DNA of 64,000 nt from Mytilus edulis (lineage: Eukaryota), in the NCBI RefSeq assembly GCF_963676685.1, contig NC_092344.1, positions 121,272,001 through 121,336,000 on the forward strand, in the 5' to 3' direction. Below, piece after piece: positions 2,601-61,338 of this stretch. The notes under the pieces are model-generated. The model was not told the origin of the DNA, did no database searches, and was given only the letters and a program-made list of their open reading frames with translations. The translations under genes were made by a program, and so were the position numbers. Position 1 is the first letter of the stretch; each line of letters starts with the position of its first letter.

Positions 2601-3785
2601 TTGGACTCCAAATTATCAGACGACCGAAAATGGAAAACACACATAGTAAACGCAAGCAAAAAAAGCAAGTTTCATAAGACGCAATCTAAAATATTGACCA
2701 GAATAATAATGCAAAAACGCATACATATATGTCTCTAATAATGTAAACCATGAAATATCGAATGAGACTATACACACAAAAGACAAGTACAATTGATACA
2801 AAGGGATTTACGTTACATCATTAGAAATAATAAATCAAGATGTGACAGATGCATCACAGAAATGAATCAAAATTAAAACTTCATGTGATAGATATTTTAC
2901 GATTTTCAAGAGCATTTGGCAATCCAAAGACAAGGTACGGTTTGTCATATCTAGTGTTGTCACAATCTACGGCATAATTGTCTCTGTTTGAACAGTCATA
3001 ATGTTTTCGATTCCCTGGATCCCTGCTTGACAATAGGTGTCCCGTGATACAAAGCAGAGATTGAGTCAGGATACCAGGCTATACGTATACTTCAAACGAT
3101 AAAGCTAGGCAAAATGCATAACATTAAAATTTATCAAAATTGATAAAAATGTGTGATGATTAACAACGAGATATCATGAGAGACTTTGATCAGCGACATT
3201 TTATTTGATGTTGTCAACTTCCTGCGGGTCTGGATATACAAGGCAATACACATGATTTAACACTTTGACAATTTAATCATTTAAGGTAATTGTTTCTAGT
3301 TATGTTCACGAATAAATACTAAAAATATACATTTTGCAGGGGAAAATAAAAATGATAAAATGCCAAAATGCTCAATGATTTTTATAAATTTAACTTGTTT
3401 AGAAGTATACGGTAGTTTATTTTTGAGATATATATGTCATATATAAGTTTTGCATCAAGTACTTCAGATTTTGTCTACAACTTATCCTCTAATACGACAA
3501 TATGATAATAAATGAATTATTATCACAAAGAAAATAAACCATAAGTTCAATTTTACTCGTCAAAACGGTTTTTAAGATAACGAGTTTTTAAATTAAGATA
3601 TATGCTTCTTTTACTCAGCATGTAAACGTTATATTTATTTCAGGACGTATTAAACACGAAAATGCGGTGTGGTCTTTCAATTCCTGAATGATTAAAACTA
3701 AAATTATCAATATTAACCAGTTATGGAATAGTTAGTAAACCTTGATCAGACCGAATCTTATACACAACAGAAACCAGACTCCATC

Positions 3786-17600: not shown

Positions 17601-20600
17601 TACTAAGTTTCTAGTTGTTTGGTCTTCAATTTCATCAAAAACTACCTTGACCAAAAACTTTAACCTGAAACTCCCACTTTCATTTTCTATGTTCAGTGGA
17701 CCATGAAATTGGGGTCAAAAGTCTAATTTGGCTTTAAAATTAGAAAGATCATATCATAAGCAACAAGTGTACTAAGTTTCAAGTTGATTGGACTTCAGCT
17801 TCATTAAAAAACTACCTTGACTAAAAACTTTAACCTGAAATGGGGCAATCGGACGCACAGACGAACGAATGGATGGACGAACAGAGGCACAGACCAGAAA
17901 ACATAATGCCCCTCTACTATCGTAGGTGGGGCATAAAAAAGTCTATATATGTAATGTAAGGAAATAACACTTTTTTGTCATATATTAATTAAATAAAACT
18001 TATATTGGATTTGCTACATTAACTCTATGTTGATTCATGGGTCTAGCAACCTTCTTTAAATGTTAGAAGCTGGTCATGATTGACTGTAACTCCTTTTTTA
18101 GCACAGCTGAAGTTTCTATACTGTAATGGTATAATTTAGTCTAAAGGGAGATAATCAAAATTTTTAATTTTGAAAAAGTACCATTTCAACCCAAACATAC
18201 ACAAATTACCTGTGATAGCCCAGGTCATTTTACATTAAATGTTTACCTGTGCTCCAATCTTTAGATTTAGTTTGTCTGGTACTGGACACATGCCATTTAT
18301 CTGTTGTGTATAAACAGAATCACTATCTGTAGATGTAAACAACTTAGATTCTCCTACAAAGAGGTAAAAAAGTTTACCATTTCAATAAGCTATCAAATAA
18401 ACTCATCATAAATACCAGGATTGAAAGTTTATATTTGCACCAGAGGAATGTTTTGTCTACAAAAGACTCAGTGACTTAAAAAAGCCAAATAAAGTATGAA
18501 ACTTTTACTTACATTTTCTTTTCAAATTAAGTCATACATTAAATTATTACATTAGAATAAAAAATTTGTAAGGGTTCTGCGGAACCCAGTGTCTCGCCTA
18601 CTTTTGCTGTAAATCGCAGGTTCGACAAAAATGAGGAAAAAAATCAATAAAAATATTCCTCTTGATACTATCTTATGATTGTAAGAAGCTTCTGTCCAAG
18701 TTTGGTAAAAATTTAGGATAGTTAATGAATCTAATAAATGTTTTGAAAACTTTAACTGCGGACTTTATGTAATGTTAACTGGAAGAAAATCTAAGTCCAT
18801 TTAAAAGTAAAATACAGAAAAATATGGAGTTATCTTTTTACAAAATTTACTTCTGGATACTATCTTATGATCATAAATAAGCTTCTGTCCAAGTTTGGTA
18901 CAAACCAAGGATAGTTTAAGAAAGTTATTAAAATTTAAAAAACTTTAACCACAGAGGGAATGTAATGTTTCCCCACAGAAAAACTAAGTCTATTTAAAAG
19001 TAAAATACAGAAAAAATGGATTTATTTTTTTACAAAATTTACTTCTGGATACTATCTTATGATCATAAACAAGCTTTTGTCTAAGTTTGGTACAAACCAA
19101 GGATAGTTAAAGAAAGTTATTAAAACTTTAAAAACTTTAACCACAGAGTGAATGTAATGTTTCCCCGCAGAAATAACTAAGTCCATTTATAAGTAAAATA
19201 CGGAAAAAATGGATTTATTTTTTTACAAAATTTACTTCTGGATACTATCTTATGATCATAAACAAGCTTTTGTCCAAGTTTGGTACAAACCAAGGATAGT
19301 TTAAGAAAGTTATTAAAACTTTAAAAACTTTAACCACAGAGTGAATGTAATGTTTCCCCGCAGAAATAACTAAGTCCATTTATAAGTTAAATACGGAAAA
19401 AATGGAAAATTATTTTTACAAAATTTACATCTGGATACTATCATATGATCATAAACAAGCTTCTATCCAAGTTTGGTAGAAATCCAGTATAGTTTAAGAA
19501 AGTTATTAAAATTTCAAAAACTTTAACCACAGAGTGAATATTGTGGATGCCGCCGACGACGATGGAATGTAGGATCGCTTAGTCTCGCTTTTTCGACTAA
19601 AGTCAAAGGCTCAACAAAAAGCTGTATGATTTAATAAGTTACTGTATGTTCATCTGTTTTCTATTAGTAAAACAAAGGAGGAGGTGTGCTTAGATACATT
19701 TTGATCCAAAAACTATGTAAAAAAATAACCAAAATCTATTCTGGAAAACATGGAGAAGGACCTCTTTTCTGATGTTAGAACTGCATTTTATTTTTTCATT
19801 TAGCATAACCTAAACTTATAGAAACAAATGTTTACAATTTATGACAAAAATAAGCAAAGACCCATTGAAACAACATCTGATAAACAAATTAAATAATACT
19901 TTTAGATATTTGGATGATATTTTTGCTCTCAATAATGATGACTTCAGTATGTATCTTGATATCTATATCACTAATGGAAAGCTGAATACTAAAATTTATG
20001 ATAAAAGAGATGATTTTTCATTTCCTATCGTTAATTATCCGTTTTTAGATGGTGACGTTCCCTTGTCACCATCTTACGGTGTTTATATATCTCAACTTGT
20101 ATGATTCGCTCGTGTATGTAACAATGTTTTAGATTTTAACAAGAGAAATTTATGTATTACTGAAAAATTATTACACCAGGGTTTTCGATATCACAAACTA
20201 GTCAAAACATTAACTAAATTTTATCATCGGTATAAGGACATCATTCGTAAATATAGCTCAACATGCAGACTTCTTATACGTTCAGGTATTTCACATCCAA
20301 TTTTTTATGGAAATATTCTTTATAAAGCACAAAGGTGTCAGTATTCACCTCAAAGACTACCAAAACCTTTGAATAGACTAATTAAGAAGGGATATAGTTA
20401 CGATACTGTTGTCAGGTCATTAAAGATTGCATATTTTGGCGTTAATATAATTGATTCACTTATAGGGTCTTTTCATCAGAACTAAACACATTTATTCAAA
20501 AACCAGTTGTTGGAATGACACGGGTTATGTTCTTCTCATATATGTTATGATGGTATGATACTAAACCCCTAACGGGAAGGATTGTGCCTGATGTTCATAT

Positions 20601-23600
20601 GATGAAATCATAATCTTTCAGTCAGTTTAATTGAAGTCTGGAGCTGGCATGTCAGTTAACTGCTAGTAGTCTGTTGTTATTTATGTATTACTGTCATTTT
20701 GTTTAGGCTTAAATTAAAATATTGTTTGTTTGCAGTTTACCGACCGAACCTTGAAAATCCTCCCGACTGTGAAAATTTTATTGCTTTAAATTTGAAGAAA
20801 TTTTTTTTTTAATACATCTATTGACGCGATCCGGAACTTTGGGTCCTTTCCAGAAATGATTTAAAGTCTGGGTCAATTACGCATTTCAAGTTCGGTTTTT
20901 CTTAGCTTCCCGTCAAGCGTTCATGTGACCATTTAATGATAAAGCACATGGAAATTGTTTACAGGTATCCATGAAGTCACGGAGGAGTACTTTACGCTGT
21001 CGTCTCGTGTCAATTTTAAGACAAATAACAAACAAAAGTTTATTATAGTAAACTGTTTATACAGATTCAGGCACATGTAATGATGTGTGATGATATCATT
21101 GACGATGATGCAGCGGATATTCATAACTGACACGATAACCATTCTGTCTCAAACAAATCGGTATAGAATCTGTGGAGCCTGACTTTATGGAACCAATTTC
21201 TACAAATCGTTGTGAAGACGACAAAGATGAAACCACTCCTCCGTGACTTAAATCTTCATGGATATCTGTAAACACCCCTGTACGGAGGAAGGGCTCATTT
21301 GAAATGTTAATGGATATAGATCATGCCAAATCAATAAGAAGCAACCCTAACTACACAAAGATGTAGAGAAAATGAATGGTTAGCTTGAAAAATAAATATA
21401 CTCTCTATATTAAATCTATCTTCGATTGCAATGAGTATGCTTCTTTAGGATAAGGGGGGCTGCCCCACTAATTGCAATTATTCTCTTTCTTACAATATTA
21501 AATGTACCCAAACTGTGTGGCCTGTGTGATTTCAATTAAAACATGTCCTCAGGAGCTATGCTGCAAATTTTTTTTATGCATTAAAAACATTTCAGTACAG
21601 ACCATTTACTTTTAATGGGGTGCTATGGATTTCACCCCAAACTTTAGATTTCTTTGGTTTTCATTAAAGCCTGGCAAAAATATAACCTTATCACATATAA
21701 TTAAATATTGATAGAAATATGAAAACAGTCGAATGTCTTAATACTTTTTTTTCAAGTTGCCTTTTTTTCAATTGGGGAAGATTCAATGGTTATTTTTTTT
21801 TATTAAAAATACACTCTTTAATACATTGTCTTATAAATCTTTAATATCTACATTTTTCTGATGAAAATACTCATGAAAACATTCTCATATTCTAGTCAAG
21901 AAGCATACATGTCTGAATATATTTCTTTAAAACAGTTGAGTTCTAGTCATAATAACATTCCTTGTTTATAAGTGTTCCAGTATTTAATAATTATACCATA
22001 TTTTATGTCATAAATTGGATAATGACACTATGTTAAAGTTTCAGTTTTGGTTAAAAAGTTTTTTATCTGAAAATGCCTGTTCATTTGATGTTGGTTTTCA
22101 GCATGTCCAGTGTTTGTTGTTTTAAAATGTTTTTTTTTCTTCACAAGAAACTTGGTTTAGTGTACATGTAATTGCTTGTTTAAACTATTTTGGCTGATAA
22201 AATAAAATATTTTTCCTACCTACCGACCCTTCAGTCTGAAGGTACAGTCGGAAAACTGCAAACAAACATATTTTTAAGGTTGGCCTTATTTTCTTTGGTT
22301 ACATCTTCTGATATCAGACTCGGACTTCTCTTGAACTGAATTTTAATGTGCGTATTGTTATGCGTTTACTTTTCTACATTGGTTAGAGGTATAGGGGGAG
22401 GGTTGAGATCTCACAAACATGATTAACCCCGCAGCATTTTTGCGCCTGTCCCAAGTCAGGAGCCTCTGGCCTTTGTTAGTCTTGTATTATTTTAATTTTA
22501 GTTTCTTGTGTACAATTTGGAAATTAGTATGGTATTCATTATCACTGGACTAGTATATATTTGTTTAGGGGCCAGCTGAAGGACGCCTCCGGATGCGGGA
22601 ATTTCTCGATACATTGAAGACCTGTTGGTGACCCTCTGCTGTTGTTTTTTATTTGGTCGGGTTGTTGTCTCTTTGACACATTCCCCATTTCCATTCTCAA
22701 TTTTATATTAAAGAAATTTATCCTGTTGAACTTACTTTAAATAAAGCTAATACTAACAATGACCACTGCCCTTTCCTCGATCTTGATATCTATATCACTA
22801 ACGGAAAGCTGAATACTAAAATTTATGATAAAAGAGATGATTTTTCATTTCCTATCGTTAATTATCCATTTTTAGATGGTGACGTTCCCTTGTCACCATC
22901 TTACGGTGTTTATATATCTCAACTTGTACGATTCGCTCGTGTATGTAACAATGTTTTAGATTTTAACAAGAGAAATTTATGTATTACTGAAAAATTATTA
23001 CACCAGGGTTTTCGATATCACAAACTAGTCAAAACATTTACTAAATTTTATCATCGGTATAAGGACATCATTCGTAAATATAGCTCAACATGCAGACTTC
23101 TTATACGTTCAGGTATTTCACATCCAATTTTTTATGGAAATATTCTTTATAAAGCACAAAGGTGTCAGTATTCACCTCAAAAACTAACAAAACCTTTGAA
23201 TAGACTAATTAAGAAGGGATATAGTTACGATACTGTTGTCAGGTCATTAAAGATTGCATATTTTGGCGTTAATATTGATTCACTTATAGGGTCTTTTCAT
23301 CGGAACTAAACACATTTATTCAAAAACCAGTTGTTGGAATGATACGGGTTAAGTTCTTCTCATATATGTTATGATGGTATGATACTAAACCCCTAACGGG
23401 AAGGATTGTGCCTGATGTTCATATGGTAAAATCATAATCTTTCAGTCAGTTTAATTGAAGTCTGGAGCTGGCATGTCAGTTAACTGCTAGTAGTCTGTTG
23501 TTATTTATGTATTATTGTCATTTTGTTTATTTTCTTTGGTTACATCTTCTGACATCAGACTCAGACTTCTCTTGAACTGAATTTTAATGTGCGTATTGTT

Positions 23601-26600
23601 ATGCATTTACTTTTCTACATTGGCTAGAGGTATAGGGGGATGGTTGAGATCTCCCAAACATGTTAACCCCGCCACATTTTTGCGCCTGTCCCAAGTCAGG
23701 AGCCTCTGGCCTTTGTTAGTCTTGTATTATTTTAATTTTAGTTTCTTGTGTGCAGTTTGGAAATTAGTATAGTGTTCATTATCACTGATCTAGTATATAT
23801 TTGTTTAGGAGCCAGTTGAAGGACGCCTCCGGGGGCGGGAATTTCTCGCTACATTGAAGACCTGTTGGTGACCTTCTGCTGTTGTTTTTTTCTATGGTCG
23901 GGTTGTTGTCTCTTTGGAACATTCCCCATTTCCATTCTCAATTTTATATGAAATCTAAAATTAAAAGTTCAAACATACCATTTAATTTTTGTAGATGATG
24001 CTCATTTATCTGGTTGACATCCTCTTTATGTGTACACAATCTGGTTGCTAGGATACCATCTCTCTGTATGTTTTGTTTTGCTGTAGCTCTCAAGGTCGTG
24101 TAGACATAGTCAGGACACCTATAAGAATAGTACATAGATGTCAACAGATACAATCAAACACTTGATACAACAATCTCAAGATTTAAATCTACAAAGCTTT
24201 ATAAATACAATAGTTTTAATGCAATACTGTTAACGTTGAAATCCAAGGGACTGACAAAAGAATTTGAATTAAGACTTATCCAAGGTTTAACTCATCCAAG
24301 TTCATATGTGTCACCAAAAATTTAGAATGCATGAAATACCTACGAGGTTTGTTTAAACTAGATATATTTTTTTTTTTAGATATGATAATTTATGATTGAG
24401 TAATCAATTTTCCTAACATTCATCAGTCACTATTAATTATGGAATCTTGAATATAAAATCTTTTTTTACCTCCATTTTGTCAAGTTCCCCCACAAGATTC
24501 TTGAAAGAAAAGGTAGAGGGTATTGTAGAAAAGATATTCCAATGATATTCTGTGCAAAACAAATAAATTGTTGGCAGTTCATGCAGTTAGACCATCTAAG
24601 TATTTTCTATTGTCATACTACAAACCTTCCTAGCCTAATTTGTTGAAGAACATCTATAAATGATTTATCTGACTGTCTTCTTACTTCTGTTAGTTCTATA
24701 TTCATCTGAATACATTTCTTCCAAGCCTGAGTCTGAAATTATTAAACAATAATCTGAATACATTTCTTCCAAGCCTGAGTCTGAAATTATTAAACAATAA
24801 TCTGAATACATTTCTTGAAGCCTGAGTCTGAAATTATTCAAAAAATACTTCTATATTTATAACTAATGTTTCAAAGTTCAATAGGTGTCTCTTAGTTATT
24901 TTTATGGGTCAGTTTCTTGCATCTGGGTTTTTACTGTAAGCCAAGCTCTTAATCAAAATCCATCCTTTAACCTTTATGTTGATTATGAGAACAGATCAAA
25001 AGTCATATAAGTTTTTGAAGTGCATGTAAGACAATGAAGTCCTTTCAGCAGAATCATTTATTATTCATTAACACACAGTATAAGAGAGATTATTTAACAT
25101 GATGCTATTTCTTGAACTGAGCTCTACCTGAAAACAGAAATTGACTTTTTCTTTGCCTTTGGTAACAGGAGGTAACTGAAGAAAATCTCCACACATTATC
25201 AGCTGTATTCCACCAAAAGGTTGGTCATTCCTTCTTATCACTCTGTTAACAAACAATGTGCAGCTAGATTATTCAAACGTTCAAAAGAAGTTTACCTATA
25301 CATTACCTCAATTTAACTTATTTTCAATCATATACAATGCAGTAAACTTAAACAATCTTATCGTGTAGACAAATTTTCTTTAAATACTAATTTTCTTAAG
25401 TAAAGAACCAAAATGTAATACATACATGTACTAAAAATAAATGAAGGAATGGTTGTATATACACAATATTTATTACATATACTACATAAATAAGGTGCTG
25501 AGCAAAACCAACAACAACAATTTATGAACCTTTGTTAGCACAGTCACATATATGTAACCCACGCCCAACATTGTCATGTGGTAAACATAATCTTCAAAGA
25601 CTCATAACTCCTACAAAAGTCTACTGTTAAAAGTTTCTTGTTGATTTACACATCTACTTATCTACAAAGTTTCATGAAATTCTGTTTTGTAGTGTCAGAG
25701 AAGTTGTGATGACCAACTGTTACAGAAGTATATTTAGACCAATATTTTCAGTTCAATTGAACATGACTTCTAAAAAGAGAATTGAATACTAATTTTCTAC
25801 ATAGTTTGTCGAAATTCTGTAACTTTTTTTCAGAGAAGTTGCAATGACAAGAACAGGACTGACTAAACGAAGAACAATCCAAAATCCTTGGACCCTTTGC
25901 ATGGGGTATAATTAGATAACCAATATTATTTCACATGACTTATTTACAGGAAATGTTCATTATCCCATGTAGGAACCACTGAGACTTATTTATAATCTCA
26001 CTTTATGTTAAAGTTACCTAGCAACAGCTTCTAATTTTTCAAAGAATTCTCCATCCACCATAGATATTTCATCAATAACTAAATGTTTACATTTCCTCCA
26101 TTGCTGAGCTACCTGTGCTCGTGATGCTAGTTGTACACAATGCTCTAATGTACCCCTTCCTGATCCAATACCTACAAAATAAAACATAACTTGACAAATG
26201 ACAGCATTTATCTTATTAATAAGAACAAGAGTTTAAATTTATAATCAGCTGAGTTTATGAATATTTTTTAATGCAATTGTATAATACAAATGTATACTAT
26301 TTCAGGAAAGCCAATATTAATTCTTTGCTGAGCTACCTGTGTTCGGGATGCTAATTGTACACAATGCTCCAATGTACCCCTTCCTGATCCAATACCTACA
26401 AAAATTACACAATACGGGAGAAATTACAACATTTATTTTGTTGTTAAAAATAAATTGTATGATGTATGGTATAAATAATTTAACAACTTGTAAGTATATA
26501 TAAGCTATCAAATGACTTTCTAGTGCAATGTCTAGCTGACTAAGTTTATAATCAGCTGAGTCAATTAATATTGTGTTTATAATGCAATTGTTTATTTCAG

Positions 26601-53387: not shown

Positions 53388-54109
53388 AACACTAGCATAA
53401 CGTATTAATTAACTGAGTTATACAAACGCCATACGATGGAGCAGAGAAGGGTATGTTACTGCTGAAAAATTTGAAATTTGAAAAGCTGAAATTTTCACGT
53501 GTGTCATAGATTTTAGTTTAAAGTCGTTCATCTTTGTCAAAGTTCAGGAGAAGATTTCGATGTAGATCGGAATCAGGCTTTCTACTCTATGTAGCACCCG
53601 TTATTAATTCATTATGATATGAGATTTGAGCACTCATTGAAATATGGATAATTGAGAAACAGAACGTTATACTTCATCAGTATATTTGGAATTAAATAAG
53701 ATACTAGTAACTTTGCAAGATACTTTTTCATTGTGTTTTTGTAAAGGTTCTCAATGTGATATCCAGTGAACGAAAACAAAAGAATAGTCAATAATAAAAA
53801 CTACTGGTGACGAGACTGAATACAAGTTATTTCTCAAAAATAATTACACATTTTAAAGAAATTATTTGTTAAACTAAGTTATCTTAAAAATAATTTTGGG
53901 TTCAGTATCAATTGCGATAATTGCTTTATAAGCTTATAAAACTGAAATTTAAAAAATGCCAAAATTTGCTGCATATTTATATATAAAAAAAAGATATGAA
54001 CATACAAAATCTTTTGGGTCACCAATTTTCGCAGTGTTCCAAATAGAAATTAGCATGTTACAATTTCCCCAAAAAATGTGATTGCATGTGTTCGCTATCT
54101 ATATATGCA

Positions 54110-54710
54110 CTTGAAATTAAAGATACTACCGACGCAGTTAGATCTGCTTCATATTTAGACCTTTTCTCCAAATGACTACTGATGGTAGGTTGAATACCAA
54201 AATTTATGACAAACGCAATGATTTTAATTTTCCTATAGTCAACTTTCCATTTCTGTGTAGCAACATCCTAGCAGCACCAGCATATGGAGTATATGTGTCT
54301 CAATTGATACGTTACTCTAGTGCTAGCCATAAGTTCGTTGATTTTGTTGTACGAGGAATACTGCTTTCTCAAAAGTTGCTAAGACAGGGCTATGAATCAA
54401 TCAAATTAAGGTCATCACTCAAGAAATTTTACGGTCGCCATCATGAGCTGATTGGCCATTATGACAAAAGTGTGTCAGAAATCATATATGATATTCTTCC
54501 TAAGTCATATAACCTTCCATCATTACCGAACTGAACAAAGAAATAACATGACGGGTGCCGTATACGGTGCAGGAAATGCTTACCCTTCCGGAGCACCCGA
54601 TTTCACTCCCGGTTTTGTTTCTTATTTATTATTTATTACTCTTGATGTAAATGTCCTTTGGTTTTGTGAGTCTTTGTTTACTCCTTGGTTTTGATTGTTA
54701 TTGTCTTCGT
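54110..54710 (+). mobile_element. Penelope-like RT 3' fragment (second family)
   Basis: LEIKDTTD..SASYLDL, KIYDKRNDFNFPIVNFPFL, AYGVYVSQLIRYS; ORF stops with no endonuclease domain. Confidence 0.8.
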
Positions 54711-61007: not shown

Positions 61008-61338
61008 AGAAAATCCTTATATTTTCGTAAAATTCAAAATTTTGTAAACAGGAAATTTATAAAAATGACCACAAATCAATAATGTGGTCATTTTTATAAA
61101 TTTCCTGTTTACAAAACTTTGAATTTTACGAAAAACTAAGGATTTTCTTATCCCAGGCATTGATTACCTTAGCCGTATTTGGCACAACTTTTTGGAATTT
61201 TAGTTCATCAATGATTTTCAACTTTGTAATTGTTTGGCTTTATAAATATTTTGATATGAGCGTCACTGATGAGTCGTATGTAGACGAAACGCGCGTCTGG
61301 CGTACTAACTTATAATCCTGGTACCTTTGATAACTATT
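61008..61338 (+). mobile_element. Hammerhead-containing repeat with 5' inverted duplication
   Basis: 61008-61073 is the inverted copy of 61083-61148; the body matches 56575-56830. Confidence 0.85.
61260..61303 (+). ncRNA. Minimal type I hammerhead ribozyme
   Basis: GCGTCA CTGATGA GTC-GTATGTA-GAC GAAA CGCGCG TC TGGCGT. Confidence 0.88.

What the first reader, a model, noticed from the sequence alone, without database searches (positions are those of the whole stretch)
20536..20602. Retroelement carrying a SECIS: candidate selenoprotein-encoding Penelope-like (Naiad) family
Seen: ~50 nt after the RT stop the UTR folds as helix I / AUGA..GA quartet / ~10-bp helix II / AAA bulge / 3-bp mini-stem, a type II SECIS. 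It is repeated at 23360-23426, where the single change keeps pairing (U-A to U-G). Established: Naiad PLEs have an N-terminal GIY-YIG, so the RT ends the ORF as here, and some bivalve and spider Naiads use Sec. Inference: full-length members have in-frame UGA codons, tying transposition to selenium supply, and truncated copies scatter SECIS elements that could recode host stop codons when in sense 3' UTRs. Here they are antisense and intronic.
Basis: partly seen in the sequence, partly recalled or inferred. Interest (0 to 1): 0.85.

Follow-up and report, generated by a model that had tools for sequence, protein, structure and literature searches.

The report
Selenoprotein-coding Naiad retroelement fragments with SECIS
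The two hairpins are real selenocysteine-insertion (SECIS) elements, carried by two dead, 5'-truncated copies of a very abundant mussel Penelope-like (Naiad) retrotransposon whose full-length copies need four UGA-selenocysteine codons; this kind of element was first described in clams and spiders in 2021, so it is a new member, not a new kind.

Summary
Both hairpins (20537-20601 and 23361-23425, + strand) match Rfam SECIS_1 at 32.3 bits (cut-off 35). Each starts 51 nt after the TAA stop of a truncated RT reading frame.

- **Window copies:** they are two head-to-tail, 5'-truncated copies of one Naiad family. They lie antisense in a PIF1 intron and are inert there.
- **Full-length copies:** three independent marine-metagenome contigs carry an unbroken 1002-codon GIY-YIG-plus-RT frame. 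It has exactly four in-frame TGA codons, all at conserved cysteine positions.
- **Genome-wide counts:** each TGA site was found in 505-1057 copies. In the 100 copies listed for each, 94-99 read TGA and none read TGT or TGC.
- **Selection:** dN/dS between subfamilies is 0.10, and no inter-TGA segment shows an excess of nonsynonymous changes.
- **SECIS conservation:** 17 of 18 base pairs show compensatory changes across 30 distinct relatives. UGA is kept in 29 of 30, the central apical A and the 3' GA in all 30.
- **Clade association:** SECIS hits occur only in the TGA-bearing clade.
- **Host:** the genome has five tRNA-Sec genes.

This matches the selenoprotein Naiads of Craig et al. 2021. It differs in host (mussel), in having a type II SECIS, and in its set of Sec sites. 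The scan met the same family before on other DNA of this genome (s1-830510, s1-837620). Sec insertion and selenium dependence remain untested.

The parts
19832..20482 (+). Copy 1: remnant of the RT C-terminal ORF (about codons 762-1002 of the family ORF). It carries an in-frame internal deletion of about 75 nt and a CGA-to-TGA change at 20102-20104. It is 5'-truncated, so it holds none of the four Sec codons.
   Evidence: blastn against full-length L051; translations. Copy 2 has CGA where copy 1 has TGA.
20483..20485 (+). TAA stop of copy 1
20537..20601 (+). SECIS of copy 1, type II: helix I, AUGA/GA core, helix II, AAA internal loop, 3-bp mini-stem
   Evidence: Rfam SECIS_1 32.3 bits; own models R1 82.2 bits and R2 71.2 bits.
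20486..20705 (+). Copy 1 3' UTR, first part (matches L051 up to position 3730)
20706..22285 (.). Unrelated insertion of about 1.58 kb with terminal inverted repeats. It splits the 3' UTR of copy 1 and is not part of the Naiad element.
   Evidence: Break in the L051 alignment at 20705/22286, and the reverse-complementary ends printed.
22286..22709 (+). Copy 1 3' UTR, second part, and the element's 3' end (L051 3728-4092 followed by L051 1-138, which is the tail)
   Evidence: the read joint 4086->73/74 shows that L051 1-135 is the continuation of the tail.
22704..23306 (+). Copy 2: RT C-terminal ORF remnant (from L051 2905, about codon 802). It is 5'-truncated and joined head-to-tail to the end of copy 1, the tandem (pseudo-LTR) arrangement typical of Penelope-like elements.
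23307..23309 (+). TAA stop of copy 2
23361..23425 (+). SECIS of copy 2
   Evidence: Rfam SECIS_1 32.3 bits; R1 78.8 bits, R2 68.5 bits.
23310..23947 (+). Copy 2 complete 3' UTR (about 640 nt) to the element's 3' end

Best explanation
**What is in the window.** It holds two head-to-tail, 5'-truncated, dead copies of a young, very abundant Naiad retrotransposon (a Penelope-like element with an N-terminal GIY-YIG endonuclease) of a mussel-like bivalve.

**How the family works.** Its single 1002-codon ORF contains four UGA codons at conserved cysteine positions:
- the second Cys of the CX4CxxC finger;
- the Cys just before the GIY motif;
- the first Cys of the CCHH finger;
- the Cys 8 residues after the DKA motif.

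The ORF ends with UAA. A type II SECIS 51 nt downstream, in the 3' UTR, is what lets the ribosome read those UGAs as selenocysteine, using the host's tRNA-Sec and SECIS-binding machinery. Without recoding, only about 54 residues would be made.

**Why the window copies are inert.** Target-primed reverse transcription starts at the 3' end and often stops early, so most copies are 3' fragments that keep the SECIS but not the UGA codons. The two copies here are of that kind. They lie antisense in a PIF1 intron, so their SECIS elements do nothing at this locus.

**Shown by computation:** the anatomy, conservation of the UGAs, purifying selection across them, SECIS covariation and its restriction to the UGA-bearing clade, and host tRNA-Sec genes.

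**Inferred:** actual Sec insertion and any dependence on selenium.
For: **1. SECIS in the window.** SECIS_1 scores 32.3 bits at both sites, over the full model.

**2. Intact full-length ORFs.** Three contigs from different marine metagenomes (L051 at 98% identity; L052 and L053 at 96%) carry an unbroken 1002-codon frame with exactly four TGA and no other stop or frameshift. The two other frames of the same DNA hold 49 and 128 stops.

**3. Genome-wide 34-mer counts with NNN at each codon.**

| Site | Hits | TGA among the first 100 listed |
|---|---|---|
| 1 | 505 | 94 |
| 2 | 546 | 98 |
| 3 | 547 | 95 |
| 4 | 1057 | 99 |

No TGT or TGC was seen at any site, and the reversed-pattern controls gave 0 hits.

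**4. The sites are Cys in relatives.** Cys is found at the same positions in relatives at 36-82% identity. Sites 2 and 4 are the two positions shared by all published Sec-Naiads.

**5. Purifying selection.** L051 against L052 gives dN/dS 0.10 (143 synonymous, 65 nonsynonymous differences). The two long segments give 0.10 and 0.11. The segments before and between the first TGAs show 6:1 and 4:0 synonymous to nonsynonymous changes. The 10-codon segment between sites 2 and 3 has no change.

**6. SECIS conservation.** On 30 distinct sequences, 91.2% of cells pair, against 40-48% when partners are slid. 17 of 18 pairs show changes on both sides. UGA is kept in 29 of 30, the central apical A and the 3' GA in 30 of 30.

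**7. Association with the TGA-bearing clade.** The curated Rfam model gives 20 SECIS_1 hits in 126 kb of TGA-clade loci. All are on the + strand, at or shortly after the ORF stop. It gives none in 64 kb of Cys-only loci. All 40 hits of my model R2 are likewise placed.

**8. Host and RNA.** There are five tRNA-Sec genes above the Rfam cut-off. RNA reads cover the whole ORF.
Against: - No direct evidence of Sec insertion.
- The window hairpins score just under Rfam's curated cut-off, and their folding energy is only about 2 sd better than shuffles.
- RNA coverage follows genomic copy number and comes in both orientations, and about half of the laid reads run on into unlike sequence. Much of the RNA may therefore be host read-through rather than element mRNA.
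- The TGA-bearing loci form a single clade, so the SECIS-TGA association is phylogenetically one event. The tree is the quick search, not the finished one.
- Metagenome contigs of a multi-copy family may be composite assemblies.
- Pfam does not recognise RT or GIY-YIG in this family's own pieces, only in aligned Cys-type relatives.
Confidence: 0.88

Rival explanations
1. The TGA codons are ordinary stops. The family would be non-autonomous, copied in trans by a related Cys-encoding Naiad. The hairpin would be a 3' UTR element with another role, for example a kink-turn recognised by the RT.
For: Most copies are truncated and dead. Pfam sees no domains in this family's pieces. Close relatives with Cys at site 4 exist (L054, P0002-P0004).
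Against: dN/dS is 0.10 overall, and the segments between TGAs that show changes show the same bias, which a never-translated frame would not keep. The four TGAs persist at the same Cys positions in L055/L077 (62% amino-acid identity) and in L078/L091 (46-47%), and L051-L055 synonymous sites are saturated. The hairpin has the invariant SECIS core and is absent from the Cys-only clades.
Confidence: 0.05
2. The UGAs are read through without selenocysteine, by near-cognate tRNAs giving Trp, Cys or Arg. The hairpin would act as a general read-through stimulator.
For: Some distant homologs carry Trp at the DKA+8 position (P0080, P0083, P0098, P0106, P0113).
Against: The hairpin matches the specific SECIS consensus (UGA, apical A and 3' GA are close to invariant) and sits up to 2.9 kb from the UGAs. 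That distance suits SECIS action, not local read-through signals. All four sites are redox- or metal-type cysteines, the classic Cys/Sec exchange. The host has tRNA-Sec.
Confidence: 0.05
3. The hairpin is a chance SECIS look-alike in AT-rich repeat DNA.
For: The score is below the Rfam gathering cut-off, and the fold z-scores are modest.
Against: Covariation across 30 distinct relatives, a fixed position after the stop, strand specificity, and absence from the Cys-only clades.
Confidence: 0.01

Closest known systems
Selenoprotein-encoding Naiad Penelope-like elements (Naiad_Mmer, Naiad_Scon in clams; Naiad_Smim, Naiad_Sdum in spiders; Craig et al. 2021, PMC8557442)
   Same: - N-terminal GIY-YIG followed by the RT in a single ORF.
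- Several in-frame UGAs at conserved Cys, including the Cys before GIY-YIG and the Cys 8 aa after DKA (both shared by all four published families).
- The first Cys of CCHH is also UGA, as in the clam families.
- The second Cys of CX2-5CxxC is also UGA, as in Naiad_Sdum.
- A non-UGA terminator and a SECIS in the 3' UTR.
- 5' truncation and tandem insertions.
   Different: - The host is a mussel-like bivalve.
- The combination of four sites was not reported for one family.
- The SECIS is type II with a conserved mini-stem and starts 51 nt after the stop. The published ones are type I and lie 1-21 nt after the stop or overlap it.
- Here the SECIS is supported by covariation across a large clade, not by a SECISearch3 grade alone.
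The mussel Naiad families of Craig et al. 2021 (not flagged as Sec)
   Same: Bivalve host and Naiad architecture, with thousands of 3' ends per genome.
   Different: The paper says the mussel CX2-5CxxC motif is lengthened by a 5-aa insert. This family has a plain C-X4-U-XX-C, so it is probably a different family. I could not compare sequences, because the supplements are not held.
Eukaryotic SECIS elements of cellular selenoprotein mRNAs (Rfam RF00031)
   Same: AUGA/GA core, apical A's, helices I and II, type II mini-stem, 3' UTR location.
   Different: It is carried by a retrotransposon and is present in about 5,400 copies per genome, most of them detached from any UGA-containing ORF.

Membership tests
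Naiad (N-terminal GIY-YIG EN+ Penelope-like element) | GIY-YIG endonuclease N-terminal to the RT in one ORF | tested here: met
   The L051 ORF reads IIY...YVGETGRYL...EH...ELNWI...GLN at residues about 90-200, and the RT motifs (PMGTNCAP, RYLDD) lie downstream. Pfam GIY-YIG passes its cut-off at the N-terminus of the aligned Cys-type relatives L104 (24.5 bits) and L122 (23.1 bits). RVT_1 is weak (22.3 bits) at residues 645-854 of L096. Pfam sees nothing in this family's own pieces, which are split by the UGAs.
Naiad (N-terminal GIY-YIG EN+ Penelope-like element) | CX2-5CxxC and CCHH zinc-finger-like motifs in the endonuclease | tested here: met
   C-HAKK-U-LT-C and U-NKPG-C...H...H are read directly in L051-L053. 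The U positions are Cys in relatives.
Naiad (N-terminal GIY-YIG EN+ Penelope-like element) | KR-rich / CxC / GxKF(Y) linker and DKA motif | tested here: met
   RKNRSHGRRTNRNQRK, SCNCS, GPKYR and PADKA are present in L051.
Naiad (N-terminal GIY-YIG EN+ Penelope-like element) | 5' truncation, tandem (pseudo-LTR) insertions, no canonical hammerhead | tested here: met
   - Copy gradient: 5,417 SECIS cores, 1,057 copies reaching site 4, about 500-550 reaching the EN sites.
- The two window copies are head-to-tail, and reads show a tandem joint.
- No hammerhead hit at E <= 10 in L051-L053.
Naiad (N-terminal GIY-YIG EN+ Penelope-like element) | Placement within the curated Naiad clade; IFD in the RT | not testable with these tools
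   The reference Naiad sequences are in a supplement that is not held. The IFD was not examined.
Selenoprotein-encoding Naiads (Craig et al. 2021) | In-frame UGA at conserved Cys, including the Cys before GIY-YIG and the Cys at DKA+8 | tested here: met
Selenoprotein-encoding Naiads (Craig et al. 2021) | SECIS in the 3' UTR downstream of a non-UGA stop | tested here: met
   TAA stop, then the SECIS 51 nt later; covariation.
Selenoprotein-encoding Naiads (Craig et al. 2021) | Sec is actually incorporated | not testable with these tools
   It was not shown experimentally in the original paper either. Needs 75Se labelling, mass spectrometry or a reporter.
Eukaryotic SECIS (Rfam RF00031) | Score at or above the curated gathering cut-off (35 bits) | tested here: not met
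   The window copies and L051 score 32.3 bits. A relative's element (L080) reaches 38.8 bits.
Eukaryotic SECIS (Rfam RF00031) | AUGA / apical AA / GA core with helices I and II | tested here: met
   In 30 distinct sequences UGA is kept in 29, the central apical A in 30 (its two neighbours in 27 and 29) and the 3' GA in 30. 17 of 18 pairs covary.

The most novel reading that the evidence does not exclude
Selenoprotein Naiads are not four odd families. They form one old, species-rich clade of marine invertebrate retrotransposons that shares a homologous type II SECIS and in which Sec and Cys toggle at five or more cysteine positions. The roughly 5,400 detached, near-intact SECIS copies that one family alone has spread through this mussel genome have, in some sense-oriented 3' UTR insertions, been taken over to create or extend host selenoproteins.
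Probability: 0.1. Interest if true: 0.85.

Novelty: new member of a known kind. Interest (0 to 1): 0.45.

Why it matters
Transposable elements that encode selenoproteins are known from one paper and four families.

**What this work adds**
- The trait exists in a mussel genome at very high copy number.
- It comes with independent evolutionary proof: purifying selection across the UGAs and SECIS covariation.
- It appears to belong to a single large clade that is common in marine metagenomes.

**Practical consequence.** Gene callers cut these ORFs at the UGAs. Among the 120 listed database homologs, about 45 begin within some ten codons after the fourth site. Bivalve repeat and protein annotations are therefore systematically wrong for this clade.

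**Biological consequence.** Thousands of mobile, ready-made SECIS elements per genome make the long-standing question of how a gene acquires a SECIS directly testable in mussels.

Tried and rejected
- **Pfam on the window's ORF remnants and on L051 pieces:** no RT or GIY-YIG hit. The architecture had to be shown through aligned Cys-type relatives.
- **More genomic copies:** Of the 20 long loci fetched before that, only L032, a frameshifted copy, reaches the endonuclease. I switched to pattern counts on the genome.
- **The look-up of encoding contigs:** I used the search for related loci on metagenome contigs instead.
- **PF05970 on the whole genome to locate PIF1:** swamped by Helitron-like copies. 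I scanned the window's translations for helicase motifs instead.
- **My simple SECIS pattern scanner:** too strict. The second covariance model then found most of them.
- **Supplementary sequences of Craig et al.:** not held, so the published families could not be placed in my tree.
- **RNA strandedness:** inconclusive. Over the 5' two-thirds of the ORF, X23 shows a 2-8-fold excess of first mates on the minus strand. X22 shows no consistent bias.
- **SECIS loss when Cys returns:** no case found. L054, L063 and L108 have Cys at site 4 but keep a SECIS hit, and L058 keeps a weak one.
- **No consensus:** Natural intact copies made that unnecessary.
Full report
**Observation**

Rfam's SECIS_1 model matches window 20537-20601 and 23361-23425 on the + strand, end to end. 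Each hit scores 32.3 bits, with E 1.4e-4 in 501-nt scans. This is under the curated cut-off of 35 bits, so the whole-window scan at gathering threshold reports only a hammerhead at 61260.

The alignment shows a 5-bp helix I, the AUGA...GA core, and a 10-position helix II with one mismatch. The thermodynamic fold recovers helix II and the mini-stem, with z-scores of only -2.1 and -1.5.

Each hairpin begins 51 nt after a TAA that ends an RT-like frame. The single A/G difference at 20602/23426 is real. It lies just outside the model's helix I and separates two dead copies, so it says nothing by itself.

**Anatomy of the window**

I aligned the window to a full-length relative, L051.

- **Copy 1:** 19832-20705, continuing at 22286-22709. 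It corresponds to L051 2785 to the element's 3' end. It has an in-frame deletion of about 75 nt and a CGA-to-TGA mutation at 20102.
- **Insertion:** the 3' UTR of copy 1 is split by an unrelated 1.58-kb insertion with terminal inverted repeats (20706-22285).
- **Copy 2:** 22704-23947, corresponding to L051 2905 to the end. It starts exactly where copy 1 ends. This is the head-to-tail arrangement typical of Penelope-like elements.

Both copies lack more than 75% of the ORF.

PIF1 helicase motifs lie on the minus strand. Motifs I, II and III are at about 27.7, 26.1 and 25.2 kb, and motif VI is at about 12.4 kb.

**The family**

The window comes from a 1.37-Gb assembly with 14 chromosome-sized pieces. 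I did not verify the species.

The 3' UTR and RT are present in many copies at 93-100% identity, and most are 5'-truncated.

| Feature counted (exact-pattern search) | Copies |
|---|---|
| SECIS core (48-mer, up to 3 mismatches) | 5,417 |
| Copies reaching the fourth TGA site | 1,057 |
| Copies reaching the endonuclease sites | 505-547 |

**Full-length ORF and the UGA codons**

Five of five longer genomic copies had TGA in the motif ...PADKAANNIIIV-TGA-RKFYIEVL. Only L032, a frameshifted copy, reached the endonuclease, and it showed three more TGAs at cysteine-like positions.

A scan of marine metagenome contigs returned 80 related loci. Three come from different samples: L051 at 98% identity, and L052 and L053 at 96%. 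Each carries an unbroken 1002-codon frame from ATG to TAA with exactly four TGAs, at codons 55, 86, 97 and 522, and no other stop or frameshift. The two other frames of the same DNA contain 49 and 128 stops.

I counted the codon at each site genome-wide with 34-mers carrying NNN at the codon.

| Site | Hits | TGA among the first 100 listed |
|---|---|---|
| 1 | 505 | 94 |
| 2 | 546 | 98 |
| 3 | 547 | 95 |
| 4 | 1057 | 99 |

The remainder are scattered single changes. No copy reads TGT or TGC, and the reversed-pattern controls gave zero hits.

**The UGAs sit at cysteines**

The four sites are:
- the second Cys of C-X4-C-XX-C;
- the Cys four residues before the GIY motif;
- the first Cys of the CCHH finger;
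- the Cys eight residues after DKA.

Relatives at 36-82% identity have TGT or TGC at the aligned codons. Database homologs at 75-78% identity have Cys at the fourth site.

Craig et al. 2021 (PMC8557442) report UGA at the Cys before GIY-YIG and at DKA+8 in all four selenoprotein Naiads. They report it at the first CCHH Cys in clams and at the first or second CX2-5CxxC Cys in spiders. This family combines all of these.

**Selection**

Between the two subfamilies L051 and L052 there are 143 synonymous and 65 nonsynonymous differences, giving dN/dS 0.10.

| Segment | Result |
|---|---|
| Before the first UGA | 6 synonymous, 1 nonsynonymous |
| Between UGA 1 and 2 | 4 synonymous, 0 nonsynonymous |
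| Between UGA 2 and 3 (10 codons) | no change |
| Between UGA 3 and 4 | dN/dS 0.10 |
| After UGA 4 | dN/dS 0.11 |

The subfamily variants seen next to site 3 (GGA/GGG and TGT/TGC) are synonymous. A 62%-identical family, L055, keeps all four TGAs although its synonymous sites are saturated. So the frame is kept as coding sequence on both sides of the UGAs.

**The SECIS is a conserved RNA structure tied to the UGA-bearing clade**

The curated Rfam model gives 20 SECIS_1 hits (23.3-38.8 bits, one above cut-off) in 126 kb of loci from the TGA-bearing clade. All are on the + strand and lie at or shortly after the ORF stop (within about 100 nt). It gives none in 64 kb of Cys-only relatives.

I built a covariance model from nine elements and then a second model from its 24 hits. 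The second model finds 40 matches at E <= 1. All are on the + strand, all lie at or after the ORF end, all are in the TGA-bearing clade or the window, and none is in the Cys-only clades.

On 30 distinct sequences:
- 91.2% of cells pair, against 40-48% when partners are slid by 1-3 columns.
- 17 of 18 pairs show changes on both sides.
- The covariation score is 0.82, against at most 0.18 for the slid controls.
- UGA is kept in 29 of 30, the central apical A in 30 of 30 and the 3' GA in 30 of 30.

One caveat is that alignments fitted to a model lean towards its structure. The slid controls and helix I speak against an artefact.

**Phylogeny**

A quick maximum-likelihood tree of the RT core puts all TGA-bearing loci in one clade (SH-aLRT 100, 36 rows). 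The all-Cys loci fall outside it. The careful search did not finish.

Inside the clade the number of Sec sites varies. The patterns at sites 1-4 (U = Sec, C = Cys) include UUUU, CUUU (the published clam pattern), CCUU, CUCU and CCCU.

L055 has a fifth UGA, at the first Cys of the CxC motif.

Three lineages with Cys at site 4 (L054, L063, L108) still carry a SECIS hit, and L058 a weak one.

Because there is a single clade, the SECIS-UGA association is one evolutionary event. The weight of the argument lies in long-term retention and covariation.

**Host and expression**

The genome has five tRNA-Sec genes above Rfam's cut-off.

The element's 31-mers are held by DNA runs under five coded organism labels and by RNA runs. 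Raw RNA reads of two runs cover the entire ORF. Coverage follows the 3'-biased DNA copy number and comes in both orientations, and about half of the laid reads run on into unlike sequence.

None of the 40 best-supported differences lies in a TGA codon. A further 179 rows were not shown. Transcription of full-length sense RNA is therefore suggested but not shown.

**Mechanism**

*Shown:* the anatomy, conservation of the UGAs, selection, the SECIS structure and its distribution, and host tRNA-Sec.

*Inferred:* the element's mRNA is translated through four UGAs as Sec by means of its own 3' UTR SECIS, giving a selenocysteine-containing endonuclease-RT. Copying from the 3' end with frequent early stops spreads SECIS-bearing fragments like the two here.

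*Speculative:* any dependence of transposition on selenium, and any recoding of host genes.

**Comparison and novelty**

This is the kind of element described by Craig et al. 2021. It differs in host, in its set of four sites, and in its SECIS, which is type II and starts 51 nt after the stop. The published elements are type I and lie 1-21 nt after the stop or overlap it.

It is probably not the mussel Naiad of that paper, whose CX2-5CxxC motif carries a 5-aa insert. I found no later paper on the subject in the held library.

The scan has already met this family elsewhere in the genome (s1-830510, s1-837620).

**Limits**

Noticed in passing
window 61260-61303 (+): Type I hammerhead ribozyme, Rfam RF00163 at 35.8 bits (cut-off 34). 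It is unrelated to the Naiad copies, which lack hammerheads.
   Followed up: no
window 20706-22285: A 1.58-kb insertion with terminal inverted repeats of about 30 nt sits inside the 3' UTR of Naiad copy 1. It is probably a non-autonomous DNA transposon and is younger than the Naiad insertion.
   Followed up: partly
window 19000-19540: About three tandem units of a repeat of roughly 180 bp lie directly upstream of the 5' truncation point of copy 1.
   Followed up: no
window 54071-54549 (+): Fragment of a different, diverged Naiad-like RT C-terminus (48% identity to P0038). Neither covariance model finds a SECIS there.
   Followed up: no
G000 C7:74815896-75374462 and C1:49149863-49149948: Five tRNA-Sec genes above the Rfam cut-off, four of them identical in score and lying within 560 kb on one chromosome.
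   Followed up: no
L055:473-3481: A 62%-identical sister family has a fifth in-frame TGA at the first Cys of the CxC linker motif (codon 383). Craig et al. 2021 do not list this as a Sec position.
   Followed up: partly
P0080, P0083, P0098, P0106, P0113: Distant homologs from large genomic contigs have Trp at the DKA+8 position, where others have Cys or UGA. The Trp codon TGG is one step from TGA, TGT or TGC.
   Followed up: no
P0001-P0120: About 45 of the 120 listed database homologs start within some ten codons after the DKA+8 site. Automatic gene calls appear to be cut at a stop there, so this clade is systematically mis-annotated.
   Followed up: partly
L071, L099, L089 (UUGA); L080, L063 (GUGA): Some SECIS elements of the clade have UUGA or GUGA in place of AUGA in the 5' core, while the helices and the 3' GA are kept.
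   Followed up: no
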